Assembly (NCBI RefSeq): GCF_021869535.1
Contig: NW_026262679.1
Coordinates: forward strand, 2,170,001-2,234,000
Direction of reading: 5' to 3'
Origin: Mytilus californianus
Lineage: Eukaryota
Length of the DNA stretch: 64,000 bases
A program made the position numbers and the translations under genes. Every line of letters starts with the position of its first letter. Position 1 is the stretch's first letter. Shown piece by piece: positions 6,719-53,308 of the stretch. Under the pieces are notes generated by a model. That model was not told the origin of the DNA, searched no databases, and saw nothing but the letters and a program-made list of their open reading frames with translations.

Positions 6719-6849
6719 AGTAAAATCACAAAAATACTGAACTCCGAGGAAAATTCAATCGGAAAGTCCCTAATCACATGGCAAAATCAAATGACAAAAC
6801 ACATCAAACGAATGGACAACAACTGTCATATTCCTGACTTGGTACAGGC
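6719..6849 (-). mobile_element. 5'-truncated dispersed repeat (family D) inserted in unit 1 only
   Basis: Absent from paralogous sites (35401-35425, 49321-49345). A related copy lies on the + strand at ~43968-44078. Its 5' end is GCCTGTACCAAGTCAGGA (3' half of a twister-like core). Confidence 0.8.
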
Positions 6850-10560: not shown

Positions 10561-10760
10561 TATTGATCCTCTTTCATGAAATTTTGATTAATTGTATCTC
10601 TGAAAAATATAGATGGTACAAATTTTACTTTTTAGATATCAAGATGCAGCTCAAAGAGTTACAAATGGATCGAAAGTTTCTTTAAAAAAAATCTTAATAC
10701 CGCCCAATTACGTATACTACTACTTAATTTTTGAAATAACAACGTTCGCACTCGCTACCA

Positions 10761-11221
10761 ATATAAAAAAGAAGATGTGGTATGATTGCAAATAAGACAA
10801 CTCTCCACAGGAGACCAAATGACACAGAAATTGACATTTATAGGTCACCGTACGGCCTTCAACAATGAGCAAAGCCCATACCGCACAGTCAGCTATAAAA
10901 GGCCCCGAAATGACAATGTCAAACAATTCAAACGAGAAAAACTAACGGCCTAATTTATGTACAAAAAATGAGTGAAAAACAAATATGTAAAACATAAACA
11001 AACGACAACCACTGAATTACAGGCTCCTGACATACATACAGAATGGGGCGGGGTTAAACATGTTAGCTGGACCCCAACCCTCCCCCTAACCTGGGACAGT
11101 GGTGTAACAGTACAACATAAGAACGAACTATAAAAATCAGTTGAAAGAGGCTTTACTCATCAGATGGATAAAAATACAAATACTTCAAATACAAGTGGAC
11201 GTGGCCGGGTACTTGTACATC
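10761..11221 (-). mobile_element. dispersed retroelement-tail repeat (family C) carrying a deleted type-P5 twister motif
   Basis: Absent at the paralogous site (~50450). Its 3' end ...ATCATACCACATCTTCTTTTTT is shared with family B. Twister-like segment at 11020-11093. Confidence 0.8.
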
Positions 11222-25259: not shown

Positions 25260-27861
25260 ATGGTTTCGTCAACTCTTGTATTGTTGTTACTGTGTGCAAA
25301 CGTTGGAAAAGCATTGGAGAGTTGTAATCCAGGTAAGAATACAAATATGTAAGATATTAAAGTTTAAAGCACTGTTGTTAACAAGATGTAAGTATTGTGC
25401 GTTATTTCTGTCTTATGATACACCCGCTATAAGTATTCAATATACAAGAATTTGACGATCGGTGGGTGTGAAATATATGCTCACATAAAGCTTGATACAA
25501 AACAACAGTAAGTTCTAATTTTAGTACCAATGAAAAATGCAACGACATTTTTATAGACGAATAAAAGGAATGACAGGCGGACAAACGAACATAGGAAAAC
25601 CATTCTGACCCTTCCTTCGTTGTGATGATATAACAACTATCGTGTGCCAGAATAAAATGTCCATTCATACATCCAAGGTTGATACTGTGTGTTGATAGAG
25701 ATGTCAATGTTTGGCCTGCTCGTTCAAATCAATAAACATTGACTGGAATCCCGTATGACTCGGCTTTTCTCCTGGTATATGTTGAAATCAATCACAGACG
25801 AAATACATGCAGTGATGGTGATAGATTGTGTTGAAATCGATCACACTAGTACTTGTAAATTGTGTTGGTCCTTGCAAAAGTCTATATTGGTCATACAGCT
25901 CTTCATATGATTCGGTTCTTATACGTCCTTTGCTTTCAAATATTCGGCATTAAGCTTTCTTGATGATGGTAAAACCAGAAAAACTCTTCTGGTTAATGAA
26001 ATTTATGTAACGTCGTTTTCATATTTTTTTCAATTACGATAAAAAAAATCAAACTAGACGAGGGACATAGCTTGATATGGATTAGTTACTTGTAATTGTT
26101 TGAGATTGCATGCTTACTCTGGATGTGGACCCGTTTGTTGGCTTGTGTCTCTACTGTTAACACAAATGATGCCTCGCTTGCATATATCGTTATAAAGGGA
26201 CATAGCTCAATAACAGTAAAAGTCAGTTTTGTGGTAATAAGTATTATGTATAAGTTTCATCCGCTACGGCGGGGGCATTAAACTATTTACAGTTTCATGT
26301 TATGAATCCTTGTTATATTAGCACATACTTCATGACATTCTTTTTGTAACAAATCAGTCAAAAAGATAAAAACAAAAATAAAAACAGATGAAACTAATAA
26401 TTCATAAATCGTCGTATGTAGCATGTCAAAATTGTGTTTGTTCTTGCTAGTATGTTTATATTGTTTGTCTGGTTCGTTTAAGTAAAATTATGTGTCTGCC
26501 TATCGTTTGTAAAAAAAATACTTTTGCTGGCGTGTTCATAATCATATTAAGTCGAATATCATTTGTAAAACTGTTCCAAGGCAATAATGTTTGTAAAATG
26601 CTTATGTACATTGTACTTTAGGAAAGACAACATGCGTGACAGAGGACCTTCTGCATATGATTATGAGAGCTGTACCTACTATAAATGATTCCAATTCAAA
26701 GACTGGTAAGTCAAGCTTAAAGTTAACACAATATTCTGATAGAAAAAGTTAAAAAAAAAAGTTATTTTCTAATGACAAGATCAACAATAAATGTTATCAC
26801 ACATATTTTATTAGGACCATTTTGTTTTATTGGAACTGAGCTGTGGTATAAAATGATTATGTTAGACAAACATTTTAACCATATATAGATTTAGGAAGAT
26901 GTGGTATGAGTGCCAATGAGACAACTCTCCATCCAAGTTACAATTTATAAAAGTAAACCATTATAGGTCAAGGTACGGCCTTCAACATGGAGCATTGGCT
27001 CACACCGAACAGCAAGCTATAAAGGGCCCCAAAAAAATTACTAGTGTAAAACCATTCAAACGGAAAAACCAACGGTCTAATCTATATAAAAACGAGAAAC
27101 GAGAAACACGTATGAACTACAGAAACAGACGACTACTACTGTAATCAGATTCTTGACTTAGGACAGGTGCAAACATTTGCAGCGGGATTAAACGTTTTAA
27201 TGGTACCAAACCTTCTCCCTTTTCTGAAACAATAGTATAACCTCACAACATAGAAAAACACACTATAAAATATCTTTGGGTTAAATAAACCATATTAACG
27301 TTTTAACTCATTTTCTTAAATTAGTCATTTTCTACTTTTATCAAAATAAATTAACTCAAACAACAGACGTTCCCCCTAAAATAAATCTCAATGAAACCGA
27401 ATAAAACGAATGTGCATTAATGCAAAAGGATTATGATAGACATTGTTTTTCAATTGTTAGATCTCGAACGAAGACCAACATTTTTTGCATCGTTAAAAGC
27501 ACCTCAGCAAACTCTGTCTGATATTAAGGATATTGTGAAGTTTGATGACGCAAAGATTAATATTGGAGGTGGATACGACTCTACAACTGGAATATTTACT
27601 GCTCCACGAAATGGAATCTACATATTCTCTTGTACTATTGTGAGTGTTGGTGGCGGTGATGTTCAATTCCAGCTTAACAAGAACAACCATTTCTATACAG
27701 GAGGGTATGCCACTAGAACGAATTATGGAGGTCAAACGGTGTACTCTATCGTCGAGCTAAGGACAGGAGATAAAGTGTATATTAAACACAGAACTGGTTC
27801 ATTACAGAAAGTGTCTGGAAATCACCACTCCACATTTTCCGGTTATCTTTTGTCTAAGTAA
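25260..27861 (+). CDS. secreted globular C1q-domain-containing protein, copy 1 (3 exons, ~185 aa, intact)
   Basis: Exons 25260-25332 (MVSSTLVLLLLCANVGKALESCNP, signal peptide), 26622-26705 and 27461-27861, with GT-AG phase-1 introns. gC1q motifs: F.A, VKFD..INIGGGYD..TGIFTAP.NGIYIFS, L..GD.VY, STFSGYLL. Confidence 0.93.
26884..27273 (-). mobile_element. family B repeat in C1q-1 intron 2, includes twister motif
   Basis: Longest family B copy in the window, matching 1-247 and 52299-52537. Confidence 0.88.
27145..27227 (-). ncRNA. type-P5 (circularly permuted) twister ribozyme-like motif
   Basis: UCAGA aaa GGGA GA AGG ... U^AA UCCC GC UGCA-aauguu-UGCA CCUG U CCU AA GU CAAG A a UCUGA. P2, P3, P5, T1 and T2 all pair, with one P4 mismatch. 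Confidence 0.75.
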
Positions 27862-28975: not shown

Positions 28976-30310
28976 AACTCTTTCAAAAACAAAGTTGAAA
29001 AGCATTGAAAACCTAAATGTTTGAAAAGTTGTACCCTGATTAAAGACATGATAGTTTCTGTATATTGTAAGAAATTCATATCTCAAGGTACCCATTAAGG
29101 TGAGACATTGTATCTTCGACAAAATTTATTAATTAAAGACTTTCTATTGTTGTAAGTGTTTTTTTCAAATAAAGTATGAACATCCTGTGCACAGACATTT
29201 TTTAACGACAAACAAATCATGAGGTCTGTGAAACTTTCTGAAATTTGAGTACTCGTTCGGAAAAACATCTACAAAATGAACAAACAAAATTAAACTCATT
29301 TTACGTATTGTTGGCCGTTGTCTAATCGACGTAAAACCCTCAACATTATTACCTAGGACTAGACTATAGCCAAGGAATTTTATACCATAATAAATAGCTC
29401 ATTTATTACGTGTTCTAATTATGTAAACTGGCAATTAGCTTATCAATTAATTGATAAATTCTATAGAAAAAAGATTACTCAAACTGGGAATCGTAAACAA
29501 ACACATTTTATAATTATCAAAGGGGTGATAATTAGAACTTACAGATGCCTTTAACCATTCTATGAAGGTCGACACAGGGTGCCAAGAACGCATTTGTTCT
29601 TACTTAATTTTATCGTATCAACTTTTTCTGGGAAGAGTCGATTTCTCAACTTTGTTACGAAACTAACAGTCCTGTTGATGAAAATATTTTCTCTGACGAT
29701 ACAGAGATGGTGGAATGACTAAGACACGATTAGCTAAAAGTGGAAGCCTTGGAAAGTTGCTCTTGTTCATAGCTTACCTCTTTTCAAAGGAATTTTAAAT
29801 CACAATTAAACACAAACATTCGAAAAGTATTCTAATTTTGATTAATAGCTAATTTCCTGGGAGGCGCTCTTGATAAAAAAATCTTTAAAAGGCAACATCA
29901 TTCTAACAGGAAACCGATTACTCGAGTATCATTTTGATATTCGATACTCGGTACTACAGAGCAATACTTGAATACTCAAGAACTTGTGACATCTCTAATA
30001 AATATAGAAGGTGTGCAATGTGCAATGTGAAAAATGAAATCCAATCTTTCAAAACTAACTAGATTATTCTTAATTTAAAATTTGATGTGATAGATGCATA
30101 AAATTTTAATGTGATAGTGGAAGGGCATCATACATTTAGTCAGTTGTTAAGCTTCAAGAACAGTTTCCCTGTTATTCACGAGAAGCCCCATCAAGAAGTC
30201 TGCTTCAGAGAATAAGAAATAGATTTCTGTCAAAGTTGGTCATGTGTCAGATGCTGGTTGTACTATAACACTTTTAACCTTTTTATCTCAATGACAATGT
30301 AAACAAATCT

Positions 30311-30712
30311 TCTGACATCAGACTCGGACTTCTCTTGAACTGAATTTTAATGTGCGTATTGTTATGCGTTTACTTTTCTACATTGGCTAGAGGTATAGGG
30401 GGAGGGTTGAGATCTCATAAACATGTTTAACTCCGCCGCATTTTTGCGCCTGTCCCAAGTCAGAAGCCTCTAGCCTTTGTTAGTCTTGTATTATTTTTAA
30501 TTTTAGTTTCTTGTGTACAATTTGGAGTTTAGTATGGCGTTCATTATCACTGAACTAGTATATATATTTGTTTAGGGGCCAGCTGAAGGACGCCTCCGGG
30601 TGCGGGAATTTCTCGCTGCATTGAAGACCTGTTGGTGACCTTCTGCTGTTGTCTGTTCTATGGTCGGGTTGTTGTCTCTTTGACACATCCCCCATTTCCA
30701 TTCTCAATTTTA
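30311..30712 (+). mobile_element. dispersed retroelement-tail repeat (family A) carrying a type-P5 twister motif
   Basis: GC-richer block in an AT-rich background. Shares the CCTGT.C.AAGTCAG core and the 3' GTTGTCTC(T/A)TTG(A/G)CA motif with families B and C. Confidence 0.75.
30385..30475 (+). ncRNA. type-P5 twister ribozyme-like motif (best copy)
   Basis: P5 GGCUAGAGG(U)/(G)CCUCUAGCC; P2 GGGG/CUCC; GA GGG with CCC (T1); U^AA at 30428/30429; GC with GU (T2); P3 CGCA/UGCG; P4 CCUG/CAGA (1 mismatch); L4 UCCCAAGU. Confidence 0.8.
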
Positions 30713-43361: not shown

Positions 43362-46300
43362 ATGGGTTCGTCAACTCTTGTCTTGTTGTTACTGTGTGCA
43401 AACATTGGAAAATCATTGGCGAGTTGTAATCTAGGTAAGAATTCAAATATGTAAGATATTGACATGTATTTAAGTTTTATACACAGTTGTTAACAAGATG
43501 TAAGTGTTGTGAGTTATTTCTCTCTTATGATACACCCGCTATAAGTATTCAATATATAAGAATTTGATGATCGGTGGTGTGAAATATATGCTCACATAAA
43601 GCTTATGACATTTTCATAGACGGACAGAAGGAAAAACACACGGACAAACGATCATAGGAAAACCAATCTATCCCCTCCTTTGGTGTGATGATATAACAAT
43701 TCTCATGAAGCCAACTTCAAATATCTATTCATACATTCGAGGTTGATACTGTCTACTTGGTAGTGTTCTCAACGTTTGTCCTACTAGTTCAAATCAATAA
43801 CTATTGACTGGAGTTCCGTATGACACGGCTTTTCTCCTGGTACATGTTGAAATCATTCACAGAAGAAATGCATGCAGTGTTGGTGATAGATTGTGTTTAA
43901 TTCGATCAGGCAAGTACCTGTGAATTGTGGAGGTGATTGTACAAGTCTAAGTAAGTCATACAGTTGTTCTCCATTCGTTTGATGTGTTTGAGCTTTCGAT
44001 TTTGCTATTTGTTAAGGGACATTCCGTTTTGAATTTTCATTGGTTCGGTATTTGTGTTATTTTACTTTTTGGTCATACAGCTCTTTAATTGTCAATATAA
44101 TACTTCCATGGTTATCTCATTTTATCGGACTTCTCAGTTTATACAGAGACATATAATACAATAATAACAGTATATGTATCTGGATTATATAATAGTCAGT
44201 TTCTGATTTTTATTTTGCCACATGCTTGTTATAAAATATTTGGCGATCACCTCCGTAATACACCCTTGTTTCCACTCATAAATATAAACGGAACATGCCT
44301 ACCATATTGATTCAATTTTATAAACTTTCGGCATGACGAGTCTCAAAGGTGAGTCTCGCATCTTTCTATCTTTGTTTTAGATTGATCACAGTTGATTGCT
44401 TGTAGTGCTTAAAAGATATATGTATCTAGGTGTTTTTCTTTGAACCATCGATATGTTTAATCGTTGTTTTAAAGTATGGATCCCATACCGCACTGGCGTA
44501 TTCTACAATGTGTCGTACAGGTGATTTATAGTCATTATCCTATACTGAAGTTGACCCTCTTAAATTGTCCTGTACCAAGTCAGGAAAATGGCCATTGTTA
44601 TATTATAGTTCGTTTCTGTGTGTGTTACATTTTAATGTTGTGTTTTTGTTGTGTCGTTGTTCTCCTCTTATATTTGATGCGTTTTCCTCAGTTTTAGTTT
44701 GTAACCCGGATTTGTTTTTATCTCTATCGATTTATGAGTTTCGAACAGCGGTATACTACTGTTGCCTTTATTTAGTTAATGTGGTTGTCTGGCTATCGTT
44801 TGTAAAAACAAAATTACTCTTGCTAGCGTGTTCATAACCATATTCAGTCGATAGTTTGTAAAATTGTTCAAAGTCAATAATGTGGTACCTTTTAAATTCA
44901 GGAAAAAGAATGGCTAACGTTTGCTTGATTTCAATGAGTTTGTATAATTCTAATACAACTTTTATCTAGGAAAAACCACATGCGTGACGGAGGACCTTCT
45001 GCATATGATTATGGGAAATGGACCTACTTTAAAAGATGGTGAGTAAAGCTTAAAACTATGACAATATTCAGCGTTGCCTATAATTATGAACTCATGAACA
45101 ATATTCCTATTGGAAACATCGTAATGATAAAATTGTGTTCGTGATTTTTTTATGCTTTTATTCTTCCAAATGCTTAGATTCGAACACAACTGATGAGTCT
45201 TATGAAAAAAAAACTGCGCGGATGATGTACTGAAATTTCAAGCCGTTACCATTTGGTTTATTTTCATACCAAAAACTGTTTTGTATCATAATCATAACTT
45301 CCAAACAATCTTATTCATTTACTGAACAAGAATTATAACGTTGTCCAAATAAACACACCACTGTCCTTTGGTCTTTAATTTGGTGGATAGTTGGTTATCA
45401 TACAACATCTCATTATTTCGCTGTTTGAGAAATGATCATAGCAATAAAACATTTAACCACAAATCTTTATTTCTTGTATTAGTGTTAGAAGTAAACAATT
45501 GCGGTAAATGATCATTGCTAAGTTAAGTAATGAGAGGTACGAACGATTTAATGTAGCACCAATTTAAACGCCTGAACGAACTACCAAACTTTGAGAGGTT
45601 TACCTAGTCGATCTATCTTTATTTCAAATCTAAAATACGTTGTTAACACGTTGTTAGGGAAAAAGTTACTTTATAATAATAGCAAGTAAAACTAAAAAAG
45701 CTTTTACTCATTTTAACATTAACTATAAAATATTTACAGCACAAGATGCAAATTTTTGTCAATTATGTTCTCTTAAGTGATGCTCGAGGTCAAAATTTTT
45801 AAATCCAAAACCTAATTCTAATGTTGAAGAGCTGACGTTAATGAGTAAATAAACCATATGAGCTTCTGAATTTGTGAATCCTGGTCACATTTCATCTGTT
45901 AACAAAGGAATAAACTCAAACAACAGACATACCCCTAAAATATATTTTAACAACATCTCGAAAAAAAAACGAATAAAACGAATGTGCACCAATGAAAAAG
46001 GATTATGATAGACATTATTTTAATTTTTAGATCTCGAACGAAGACCACATTTTTTGCATCATTAAAAACATCTCAGCAAACTCTGTCTAATATTAAGGAT
46101 ATTGTGAAGTTTGATGACGCAAAGATCTATATTGGAGGTGGATACGACTCTACAACTAGAATATTTACTTCTCCACGGAATGGAATCTACATATTCTCCT
46201 GTACTATTATGGGTAATGCTGGATGTGCAGTTCATTTCCAGCTAAATAAGAACGACCAGTTATATACATCAGGGTTTGTCGCTAAATCGAACTATGGAGC

Positions 46301-51556: not shown

Positions 51557-53308
51557 CACAGGTAAAATAGCTACGGACGTTTTACGGAAAAATAGTACCA
51601 CGTCTAAAATACGGATCTTACGTATTACGGACGGTCTAAAACATCCGTTTTACGGACGTTTTTCGTCCGTATTACGGCTGTAAAAGCACATGTTTTATTT
51701 TCACTAAAAATACCTTGTATGATATTTATCTTATATATTTCTTTCACTATAACATTAAGAAATTGATACATCAACGTGCAAAAATGGTTTAAAAGAAAAT
51801 ATCATGCCTTGATTTATAATAAAGGTTCATGTTTTTGACACCCCTTCATGAATTAAGGGTATACTGCCCTGCAAATATAGCATGAACTTGTCTTTTTCGT
51901 GTTTGTGTTACTGGTTTGCTGTTTCGTAGTAAAGGTGCCTATATGATGTATCTATGAATGTCAACAAAAGTAAACGTCATATATGCATCGAGCGATGTCC
52001 GTAAATTGCATGACCTTCACAAATGTTTTTCAGAGTATTTTTGTTCGTATATCACAATTGTAAATATTGTACAATCAAGAAATACGCATAAAGTGTGCTT
52101 AGATACTAATTCATATCACATTTATAAGTAAACTGAAAGGCATGTTTTACATATACACATGTAACCTGTATATGGAAAATGTCTACATTTCACACAGAAG
52201 GATATACATCGTTGAGACAGCAACCAAATGACAAAATAAAAACAAACAACATATAAAGGGCAATATAGTTGTCTTCAATCGAGATGAGCTGTCAACAACA
52301 AATGTTTGCACCTGTCCTAAGTCAGGAATCTGATTACAGTAGTTGTCGTCAGTTTATGTAGTTCATACGTGTTTCTCGTTTCTCGTTTTTATATAGATTA
52401 GACCGTTGGTTTTTCCGTTTGAATGGTTTTACACTAGTAATTTTTTGGGGCCCTTTATAGCTTGCTGTTCGGTGTGAGCCAATGCTCCGTGTTGAAGGCC
52501 GTACCTTGACCTATAATGGTTTACTTTTATAAATTGTAATTTTTCTATAAATTCAACCACCAAAAGATATATAAAAAAAATAGATTTGTACTTTTACCTG
52601 CAACTTAACAAAATCATATTTTTTTCCGTTGTAAATTTTGAATAAATATTATGAATAAATATCGTAACTAATATTTTAAATTTCACTCAATTTCATCCCC
52701 TTCTTTTATTAAAAAAACTAATTTTGACATTAGAAACAATTTTGAACAGCATGTGACACCCATATCTCAACTTTTTAAAAGAAAATATTAACGCAAGAAG
52801 ATGCTTCTGAAAGATTGTTTTTCAACAAAAATCAAGTTTTTATCACAATTATTGTCTACATTTCACAAAAAATAGGTTCTTTTCTTTTATAGATATTAAC
52901 ACTGTGCTAAAAGATTTTAAAAATTAGCTGAGACAATCCTGACGTATCGTAAGACATAGATGTGTTGACGAACAAACATTGTGATCAAAATGGGGCACCT
53001 GCAAACTAGTCAACAGGGCCATTGAATTCTTTGGTGTATTAAAAGGTCTTGACATAATGATTAATATATATGGTTTTTAGTGTGGACATATACAAATCAA
53101 TTATAATTTGACATTAACAAAGATAAAAGTCAGAGGTCACCTTCAATAGTAAGCGACACATCATACTTAGGTGCCGCTCTCATGAGGAAATTATTAAAAG
53201 CCTATGGCAAAGGATTTAAAAGTACTGTTACGGACAGAAAATGCGAAAAAATATCAAATATTTTTACATTAAGGTCAGAGGTCAAGGTCAGATGCTATTT
53301 TACCTGTG
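51557..53308. mobile_element. non-autonomous DNA transposon, CMC/EnSpm-like (CACAG termini, TA duplication), composite
   Basis: Perfect 15-bp TIR CACAGGTAAAATAGC / GCTATTTTACCTGTG; TA on both sides; empty site at ~37692-37702; multiple TACGGA subterminal repeats at the left end. Confidence 0.82.
52299..52537 (+). mobile_element. family B repeat fragment nested in the DNA transposon
   Basis: Reverse complement of 26955-27180. Starts in the P3 loop of the twister and retains an intact P4/L4, CCTGTCCTAAGTCAGGA (52311-52327). Confidence 0.85.

What the first reader, a model, noticed from the sequence alone, without database searches (positions are those of the whole stretch)
30385..30475. Circularly permuted (type-P5) twister ribozyme fold hidden in a mussel-type dispersed repeat
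Seen: 5'-GGCUAGAGGU aua GGGG G A GGG uugagaucucauaaacauguu U^AA CUCC GC CGCA-uuuu-UGCG CCUG U CCC AA GU CAGA A GCCUCUAGCC-3'. Established: the twister consensus (e.g. rice Osa-1-4) is P1-UAA-P2(4 bp)-GC-[P3]-P4-U CCC AA GC-P4'-A-[P5]-P2'-GA-GGG-P1', with pseudoknots T1 (CCC/GGG) and T2 (GC/GC). Every core element is present here, opened in P5 (9-10 bp stem). The deviations are one C.A mismatch in P4, a G.U in T2 and a non-standard P1. Inference: this repeat family encodes a self-cleaving twister. Twisters are known in non-LTR elements (e.g. Schistosoma RTEs), but I know of no description in these bivalve repeats.
Basis: partly seen in the sequence, partly recalled or inferred. Interest (0 to 1): 0.9.

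Follow-up and report, generated by a model that had tools for sequence, protein, structure and literature searches.

The report
Twister ribozyme in Naiad retroelement tail
A 91-base stretch of a mollusc repeat folds like a twister self-cutting RNA. The repeat is the broken-off tail of a Naiad Penelope-like jumping gene, a group reported to carry no ribozyme, and two palindromes replace one stem, which suggests the RNA works in pairs.

Summary
It lies in a 406-bp 5'-truncated copy (30307-30712, +) of a ~4-kb Naiad-type Penelope-like retroelement. That element has an N-terminal GIY-YIG domain plus RT, four in-frame UGA codons and a SECIS.

The window copy gets no Rfam hit. It carries two weakening variants, U30432 and A30464. 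That is below the gathering score because the P1 hairpin is missing.

The motif recurs 212-491 nt after the RT stop in all ten contigs that have enough 3' flank; their RTs are 51-77% identical. P2-P5 and both pseudoknots covary: 93.7% of cells pair against 73.5% when shuffled, and 17 of 22 pairs change on both sides. GA and UAA are invariant.

P1 is replaced by two palindromes whose sequences differ between lineages. The second ends exactly where the P1 5' strand should. This points to intermolecular pairing, as in the dimeric hammerheads of other Penelope-like elements.

Self-cleavage is inferred, not shown, because the RNA-seq data were contigs only. Three more distant Naiads without selenocysteine showed no motif. 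No paper in the library links twister to Naiads. The scan reached the same reading twice before on other windows of this genome.

The parts
30307..30712 (+). 5'-truncated copy (406 bp) of a ~4,020-bp Naiad-type Penelope-like retroelement. Only the distal 3' UTR is present; there is no ORF and no SECIS.
   Evidence: 30 other copies share the 3' end and have variable 5' ends. Head-to-tail units of 4,020 bp occur in L048. The frame carries GIY-YIG plus RT and four in-frame TGA codons.
30385..30475 (+). Twister-like motif, type-P5 topology (opened in P5).
   Evidence: Sequence; own covariance models at 103 and 100.5 bits; Rfam Twister-P5 hit on sister copies.
30385..30394 (+). P5 5' arm; pairs with 30466-30475.
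   Evidence: 10 bp, one of them a U.G pair. All five modelled P5 pairs change on both sides across lineages.
30398..30401 (+). P2 3' strand (GGGG); pairs with 30431-30434 (CUCC, one G.U).
   Evidence: The pair at alignment columns 22-72 occurs as GC, UG, AU, UA and CG.
30402..30403 (+). Conserved G-A. The G sits at the place of the twister general base.
   Evidence: 23 of 23 aligned motifs keep GA. It aligns to GA of Rfam Twister-P5.
30404..30406 (+). T1 pseudoknot strand GGG; pairs with CCC at 30454-30456.
   Evidence: T1 was not part of the covariance model, yet its outer pair occurs as GC 13, AU 5, UA 2, GU 1 with none unpaired.
30408..30417 (+). Palindrome 1 (UGAGAUCUCA), in the place of the P1 3' strand.
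   Evidence: It is perfect, and its sequence differs in nearly every lineage.
30420..30427 (+). Palindrome 2 (AACAUGUU), in the place of the P1 5' strand. It ends directly before U30428.
   Evidence: Variants AACCGGUU, AACUAGUU, AACGUU and AAUGCAUU are all palindromic. Where a perfect second palindrome is found, 0 nt separate it from the U.
30428..30430 (+). UAA. The predicted scissile bond lies between U30428 and A30429.
   Evidence: 22 of 22 aligned motifs keep UAA, and it aligns to UAA of Twister-P5. Cleavage itself is inferred.
30435..30436 (+). T2 strand GC; pairs with G30459 U30460.
   Evidence: The pair occurs as GU 15, AU 2, CG 2. CC/GG is seen in L074, L077 and L079.
30437..30448 (+). 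P3 hairpin (CGCA-UUUU-UGCG).
   Evidence: All four pairs change on both sides.
30449..30464 (+). P4 hairpin with loop UCCCAAGU. A30464 makes a C.A mismatch in this copy.
   Evidence: P4 is AUCG/CGAU or ACCG/CGGU in other lineages.

Best explanation
The stretch is a decayed copy of a twister-class RNA module. One lineage of Naiad Penelope-like retroelements, the one that encodes selenocysteine, keeps this module in its 3' UTR between the SECIS element and the 3' tail. The RNA forms P2, P3, P4 and P5 and the two pseudoknots T1 and T2 of a type-P5 twister. It keeps the G-A and U-A-A letters that do the chemistry in known twisters. The most likely action is self-cleavage between the U and the first A (U30428/A30429 here), leaving a 2',3'-cyclic phosphate and a 5'-OH. 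The usual P1 hairpin is missing. Two short palindromes stand in its place, and the second abuts the cleavage-site U. These most likely pair between two copies of the RNA, either two molecules or two units of a tandem transcript. Cutting would then depend on pairing, as in the dimeric hammerheads of other Penelope-like elements. Shown: the fold, its conservation and covariation, and its fixed place in the element. Inferred: cleavage, the dimer, and any role in making unit-length or circular RNA. The window copy lacks an ORF and a promoter and has two weakening substitutions, so it is probably a dead relic.
For: The curated Twister-P5 model aligns over all 58 positions to full-length copies (23.1 bits, E 0.0043) and to a second family (21.2 bits, E 0.014); only P1 is skipped. 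The motif lies 212-491 nt 3' of the RT stop on the coding strand in all ten contigs with enough flank, whose RTs are 51-77% identical. Between lineages only the twister core of the 3' UTR still aligns. On covariation, 93.7% of cells pair against 73.5% when shuffled, 17 of 22 pairs change on both sides, and the score is 0.539 against 0.201 shuffled and at most 0.089 when slid. This includes T1 and T2, which the model did not contain. GA is kept in 23 of 23 motifs, UAA in 22 of 22, and the loop U in 23 of 23. Nine of 13 motifs parsed by pattern have two perfect palindromes, against 1-4% of shuffles. Their 4-nt centres are themselves palindromic, and some extend by G.U pairs, which fits RNA rather than DNA pairing. 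P1 is not strictly needed for twister cleavage, and cleavage lies one nucleotide 3' of P1 (PMC8501958). Hammerheads of Penelope-like elements have palindromic stem III loops and act as dimers (PMC6765202).
Against: No cleavage data exist. The RNA runs were held as contigs only and show no ends. All Rfam scores are below the gathering value of 37.6, and the window copy scores nothing. A genome-wide Twister-P5 search returned nothing, though only 79 of about 36,000 candidates were scored. Genomic 5' ends do not pile up at the predicted site. One clade (L071, L077, L078) has a U.U in T1. The L076 copy reads UGA at the site. Three more distant Naiads show no motif. The alignments were fitted to the model's nested helices, which favours those pairs.
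Confidence: 0.72

Rival explanations
1. The fold is real and under selection but no longer cuts. It would serve as a structured and dimerising 3' UTR element, for example as a handle for the element's RT or a dimer linkage that favours template switching and tandem copies.
For: P1 is absent in every lineage, and two palindromes suggest that dimerisation is the selected feature. Scores are below Rfam's gathering value. There is no 5'-end pile-up at the site.
Against: The unpaired letters that matter for chemistry rather than for helices (GA, UAA, loop U and AA) are essentially invariant, while the helices change freely. P1-poor twisters still cut (PMC8501958).
Confidence: 0.17
2. The palindromes act at the DNA level, for example as protein binding or integration signals, and the twister resemblance around them is incidental.
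For: All the palindrome cores are 4- to 10-bp sites that are symmetric in DNA.
Against: Several palindromes extend or exist only through G.U pairs, such as AACUGGUU and the U...G ends in the L071, L077 and L079 lineages. The surrounding helices and pseudoknots covary as RNA on one strand, and T2 is a G.U pair in 15 of 21 rows.
Confidence: 0.05
3. Chance resemblance in an abundant repeat.
For: The window copy itself has no Rfam hit.
Against: The core pattern is expected 0.00 times by chance. The curated model hits sister copies. The motif is conserved at the same place in diverged elements with compensatory changes.
Confidence: 0.01

Closest known systems
Type-P5 twister ribozyme (Rfam RF02684, clan CL00120)
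   Same: It has the same order of elements, the same conserved letters (GA-GGG, UAA, GC, GUCCCAAG), the same P2 and P4 helices and the same T1 and T2 pseudoknots. The full-length model aligns.
   Different: There is no P1 hairpin; 20-24 nt holding two palindromes stand in its place. T2 is a G.U plus a C-G pair. Scores of 21-23 bits fall below the gathering score of 37.6. Activity is untested.
Twister variants (T-variants) of Perere-3 RTE retrotransposons in Schistosoma mansoni (PMC8501958)
   Same: These are twister cores inside a retrotransposon with a weak or absent P1. Even the P2 and T1 letters are alike (UAA CUCC GC ... GAGGG UUG).
   Different: Those are type P1, sit at the 5' end of a LINE-like element, and form P1 with the target-site duplication. 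This one is type P5, sits in the 3' UTR of a Penelope-like element, and has palindromes in place of P1.
Minimal dimeric hammerheads in the terminal repeats of Penelope-like elements (PMC6765202, citing Cervera and de la Pena 2014 and Lunse et al. 2017)
   Same: The host is the same class of retroelement, with tandem copies. The ribozyme lies in the repeat or 3' region. The helix next to the cleavage site is replaced by a palindrome, which implies action as a dimer.
   Different: The ribozyme class is different: twister, not hammerhead. No hammerhead is found in these elements. Naiads were reported to lack canonical hammerheads (PMC8557442).
Selenoprotein-encoding Naiad elements of clams and spiders (Craig et al. 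2021, PMC8557442)
   Same: They share the N-terminal GIY-YIG plus RT layout, in-frame UGA at cysteine positions, a SECIS just 3' of the stop, tandem copies and 5' truncation.
   Different: That paper reports no ribozyme in Naiads. Here a twister-like module follows the SECIS.

Membership tests
Twister ribozyme (Rfam CL00120) | P2 and P4 helices flanking the conserved core | tested here: met
   Both are present and covary. P2 pairs in 96.4% of cells and P4 in 91.7%, with changes on both sides in 2 and 3 pairs respectively.
Twister ribozyme (Rfam CL00120) | Double pseudoknot: T1 (GGG with loop CCC) and T2 (GC with loop GY) | tested here: met
   T1 occurs as GGG/CCC, AGG/CCU, UGG/CCA and AGA/UCU. 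T2 occurs as GC/GU, CC/GG and AC/GU. One clade has a U.U in T1.
Twister ribozyme (Rfam CL00120) | Conserved catalytic letters: the G of G-A before T1, and the A 3' of the scissile U-A | tested here: met
   GA is kept in 23 of 23 motifs and UAA in 22 of 22. The L076 copy reads UGA.
Twister ribozyme (Rfam CL00120) | P1 helix closing the cleavage-site loop | tested here: not met
   No cis helix can form. Rfam's 20 P1 positions are skipped, and two palindromes take their place.
Twister ribozyme (Rfam CL00120) | Score at or above Rfam's gathering value (37.6 bits for RF02684) | tested here: not met
   Scores are 23.1 and 21.2 bits for the best copies. The window copy gives none.
Twister ribozyme (Rfam CL00120) | Site-specific self-cleavage | not testable with these tools
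   RNA runs were available only as contigs, so no ends can be read.
Naiad Penelope-like element | GIY-YIG endonuclease N-terminal to a Penelope-type RT in one frame | tested here: met
   The frame of the L048 unit shows the IIY...YVGET motifs upstream of the PADK, LPKLHK and YLDD motifs. Pfam finds GIY-YIG in distant homologues. Pfam itself gives no hit on the pieces of this element.
Naiad Penelope-like element | Tandem or partial tandem copies, 5' truncation, and no canonical hammerhead | tested here: met
   Head-to-tail units of 4,020 bp; variable 5' ends; no hammerhead at E<=10.
Selenoprotein-encoding Naiads | In-frame UGA at cysteine positions plus a SECIS in the 3' UTR | tested here: met
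   There are four in-frame TGA codons and a TAA stop. SECIS_1 scores 31.7 bits in L048 and 39 bits in L071, the latter above the gathering value of 35.

The most novel reading that the evidence does not exclude
Naiad retroelements, thought to be the ribozyme-free branch of Penelope-like elements, carry a twister that cuts only when two copies pair through palindromes. Two unrelated ribozyme classes (hammerhead and twister) would then have been recruited by one retroelement class in the same dimer-dependent form. That would point to a shared need to process tandem transcripts into unit-length, possibly circular, RNA templates.
Probability: 0.4. Interest if true: 0.85.

Novelty: new variant of a known kind. 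Interest (0 to 1): 0.78.

Why it matters
Craig et al. 2021 found no canonical hammerhead in Naiads and asked whether ribozymes matter at all for Penelope-like elements. A conserved twister at the equivalent place would answer that for one large lineage. The intact 35-nt core alone occurs more than 7,000 times in this genome. The finding would add a natural twister form that has palindromes in place of P1. It would also make the role of dimer-dependent cleavage in Penelope-type retrotransposition testable with two different ribozymes. Separately, a short non-autonomous derivative spreads SECIS-plus-twister cassettes through the genome, which bears on how new selenoprotein 3' UTRs might arise.

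Tried and rejected
1. Rfam on the window at the gathering score, and at E<=10 on 30300-30560, found nothing.

2. Rfam Twister-P5 over the whole genome found nothing, but only 79 of about 36,000 candidates were scored, so this says little.

3. RNA evidence for the cut could not be obtained. Every run was held as Logan contigs. The element is present in RNA libraries of four studies, and at least one contig spans the site, but ends cannot be read and DNA carry-over cannot be excluded.

4. I looked for a genomic footprint of cleavage by counting copies whose 5' end sits exactly at the site. There were 11 at the site, 8 at -4 (mostly internal deletions), 1 at +4 and 43 at +10. This shows no clear enrichment and is inconclusive.

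5. P1 as a cis hairpin is rejected. The palindromes leave loops of 0-2 nt at full pairing, and the 4-nt centres are themselves palindromic in every lineage, which a hairpin loop need not be.

6. RNAcofold favours dimers by 7.6-14 kcal/mol. It cannot model the pseudoknots, so I give this little weight.

7. No hammerhead was found in the element or its relatives. The family-2 element has no tRNA head.

8. Three more distant Naiad-like elements (34-47% RT identity, uninterrupted ORFs) gave no hit with my model, with Rfam or with a loose descriptor. The descriptor itself is unspecific, at about 2.5 hits per shuffled window.

Family 3 and the more distant families therefore rest on a few decayed copies.

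11. The original twister paper could not be read.

Full report
**Observation.** All the listed elements are in place:
- P5 arms at 30385-30394 and 30466-30475.
- P2' GGGG at 30398-30401, then G30402 A30403 and T1 GGG at 30404-30406.
- A 21-nt stretch that cannot form a P1 helix.
- U30428 A30429 A30430, then P2 CUCC at 30431-30434 and T2 GC.
- A 4-bp P3 hairpin.
- P4 CCUG/CAGA around the loop UCCCAAGU.

A pattern made of the fixed letters matches once in the window, with 0.00 matches expected from shuffles. The strand folds better than shuffles (z -2.45) and better than its complement (z -1.30). Rfam reports nothing for this copy, either at gathering scores or at E<=10 on a 261-nt slice.

**What the repeat is.** The motif lies in a 406-bp element copy, 30307-30712. 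Thirty other copies in the same 1.65-Gb genome are 95-100% identical over this stretch. They share its 3' end and reach variable distances further 5'. Longer copies form head-to-tail arrays with a 4,020-bp unit.

One reading frame of the unit carries GIY-YIG motifs followed by Penelope-type RT motifs (PADK, LPKLHK, YLDD). It is interrupted only by four TGA codons at cysteine-like positions and ends in TAA (stops were viewed as asterisks and not read through in any tool). A SECIS_1 match follows about 50 nt after the stop (31.7 bits). This matches the selenoprotein-encoding Naiad Penelope-like elements described by Craig et al. 2021 (PMC8557442). The window copy is a 5'-truncated tail without ORF or SECIS.

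**The family form is a better twister.** Among copies, two positions are polymorphic: 30432 (U or C) and 30464 (A or G). The intact 35-nt core occurs 7,092 times in the genome, and nearly all of the first 100 listed have CCCC. On such a copy Rfam Twister-P5 (RF02684) aligns over its whole length at 23.1 bits, E 0.0043 for the slice searched. It matches GAGGG, UAA, P2, GC and the P4 loop GUCCCAAG and skips only the 20 positions of P1. The score is below the gathering value of 37.6.

**Other families in the genome.** A second family is an older, roughly 790-bp non-autonomous element made of a SECIS-like element, the motif and a related tail. It keeps the same layout with different helices. Its P3 is CACAU/AUGUG and its P5 is CCACUG-UCC-CAGG / CCUG-UAAUU-CAGUGG. 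It hits Twister-P5 at 21.2 bits. The window holds a copy of it at about 10760-11219 (-) with a 13-nt deletion through P4.

A covariance model built from the two families finds a third family in the window at 27137-27235 (-). That family has P2' GGGA / P2 UCCC, T1 AGG with loop CCU, P3 UGCA/UGCA and P5 CAGA/UCUG. The model also finds many more decayed relatives in the flanks of fetched loci.

**Other assemblies.** The 435-aa RT piece has 4,416 homologues at E<=1e-10. I fetched contigs for ten homologues of 51-77% identity from at least seven other samples or assemblies. All ten contigs with enough 3' flank carry the motif on the coding strand, 212-491 nt after the RT stop. The hit in L076 is weak (20.4 bits). 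Several contigs also have a SECIS between the stop and the motif; L071 scores 39 bits, above the gathering value. When the 3' UTRs of different lineages are compared by BLAST, the twister core is the only part that still aligns in most pairs; only the two closest (the window's family and L069) align throughout.

**Covariation.** The test used 21 distinct motifs aligned to the second model, with the two pseudoknots added by hand (they were not in the model).

| Measure | Observed | Shuffled | Slid partners |
|---|---|---|---|
| Cells forming a standard pair | 93.7% | 73.5% | 31-43% |
| Pairs with changes on both sides | 17 of 22 | 11.8 (0 of 500 shuffles reach 17) | 2-8 |
| Covariation score | 0.539 | 0.201 | at most 0.089 |

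All figures are; an earlier set gave the same picture.
- The outer T1 pair occurs as GC 13, AU 5, UA 2, GU 1.
- The first T2 pair occurs as GU 15, AU 2, CG 2.
- P4 occurs as CCUG/CAGG, AUCG/CGAU and ACCG/CGGU.
- The unpaired core letters do not vary: GA 23/23, UAA 22/22, loop U 23/23, loop AA 21/23 each.

Two caveats apply. The nested helices were aligned by a model that contains them. Also, cells count sequences rather than events.

**The P1 region.** No lineage has a P1 hairpin. Instead there are two palindromes.
- Palindrome 1 lies one or two nucleotides after T1. Its forms include UGAGAUCUCA, UGGGAUCCCA, UUGGAUCCAA, GGGCCC, AGGUACCU, AUGGCCAU, UGGUACCA, GGCGCC, CGGGCCCG and AGGAUCCU.
- Palindrome 2 is AACAUGUU, AACCGGUU, AACUAGUU, AACGUU or AAUGCAUU. 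It ends directly before the U of UAA.

Nine of 13 motifs parsed by pattern have both palindromes perfect, against 1-4% of composition-matched shuffles. The imperfect ones are one step away: AACUGGUU pairs with G.U, and AACCAGGUU has a central A. Palindrome 2 sits exactly where the 5' strand of P1 sits in known twisters, which cut one nucleotide 3' of P1 (PMC8501958).

As hairpins these sequences would have loops of 0-2 nt at full pairing. If read as short stems with 4-nt loops, the loops (GAUC, GGCC, GUAC, GCGC) are all palindromic, which a loop has no reason to be. Several palindromes extend by U...G ends, which pair in RNA but not in DNA. The simplest reading is pairing between two copies of the RNA.

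**How it most likely works.** By analogy with solved twisters (my own knowledge plus PMC8501958), the conserved G of GA and the A 3' of the scissile bond catalyse cleavage between U and A. P1 is not strictly required.

Canonical Penelope-like elements carry minimal hammerheads whose stem III has a palindromic loop. These act as dimers, and the tandem layout of the elements is thought to help (PMC6765202). I infer the same logic here. Two motifs, from two molecules or from neighbouring units of a tandem transcript, would pair through the palindromes and cut. This would release unit-length RNA with ends that can be ligated. Cleavage, the dimer and this role are inferences.

**Attempts to see cleavage.** RNA-seq libraries from four studies contain the element, but all are held as contigs, which show no ends. 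Copies whose 5' end lies exactly at the predicted site are not clearly enriched: 11, against 8, 1 and 43 at nearby control positions.

**Limits.** Three more distant Naiad-like elements (34-47% RT identity, uninterrupted ORFs of about 900-1,000 aa, no SECIS hit) show no motif with my model, with Rfam or with a loose descriptor. As far as I can detect, the motif belongs to the selenocysteine lineage. One clade has a U.U in T1, and one copy reads UGA at the site. The species behind the other assemblies are unknown to me.

**Comparison and novelty.** Twisters are known in retrotransposons only at the 5' end of Perere-3 and other RTE elements (PMC8501958; PMC7761336). Craig et al. state that Naiads lack canonical hammerheads. 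Full-text searches for twister together with Penelope-like, Naiad, Mytilus or bivalve terms found no description of this motif. The library does not hold most subscription journals.

Two earlier notes of this scan, on other windows of the same genome, reached the same reading. They are not independent evidence, and I re-derived each step here.

**Verdict.** This is a real, selectively maintained twister-type fold in a new host and a new P1-less palindromic form. Catalysis is probable but untested, and the window copy is a weakened relic.

Noticed in passing
window 10760-11219 (-); motif remnant 11010-11102: A copy of a second family, about 790 bp and non-autonomous, made of a SECIS-like element, the twister motif and a tail. 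This copy has a 13-nt deletion that removes the P4 5' strand and the T1 loop. The family's exact 35-mer occurs 3,374 times in the genome.
   Followed up: yes
window 27137-27235 (-) and 52272-52341 (+): A third, more diverged family of the motif, with T1 AGG/CCU, P2 GGGA/UCCC and palindromes UGGUACCA and AACGUU. The second place is a partial copy starting near T2.
   Followed up: partly
window 6833-6848 (-) and 44569-44584 (+); L060 2522-2624, L046 118-219, L006 2916-3014: P4-type hairpins CCUG-UACCAAGU-CAGG belong to still more distant repeat families. In L060 the partner of the loop ACC would be GGU. Other core letters look decayed or different. Whether these are twisters is open.
   Followed up: partly
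L048 1257-1321 (-); L071 4674-4741; L076 3899-3961; L069 2563-2630: SECIS elements lie just 3' of the RT stop, and the frame has four in-frame TGA codons. The element is a selenoprotein-encoding transposon of the kind reported for clams and spiders.
   Followed up: yes
L071 4674-5068 and 5519-5913; L077 3934-4948: The SECIS-plus-twister cassette is repeated in tandem downstream of one ORF (845-bp period in L071, three motifs in L077). The copies differ in palindrome 1 (AGGUACCU, AUGGCCAU, AGGAUCCU).
   Followed up: partly
L072 3674-3777: A long hairpin about 180 nt after the motif matches plant and animal miRNA precursor models on both strands (MIR6445 at 49 bits, below gathering). It is probably just a long inverted repeat.
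   Followed up: no
window about 11150-11165 (-): The second family has CUGAUGAG, the first half of a hammerhead core, upstream of the motif. No GAAA partner was seen and Rfam finds no hammerhead. Craig et al. mention such half cores in Naiad 3' UTRs.
   Followed up: partly
L048 973 (equivalent to window 30472): In RNA-library contigs of four studies nearly all depth shows G instead of A in the P5 3' arm. This turns a U-A pair into a U.G pair, so the stem stays paired.
   Followed up: no
literature: PMC4758252: Bivalve and gastropod SINE superfamilies share conserved central domains of unknown function, such as MESC. Whether any of them corresponds to this motif could not be checked, because no sequences are in the text.
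   Followed up: no
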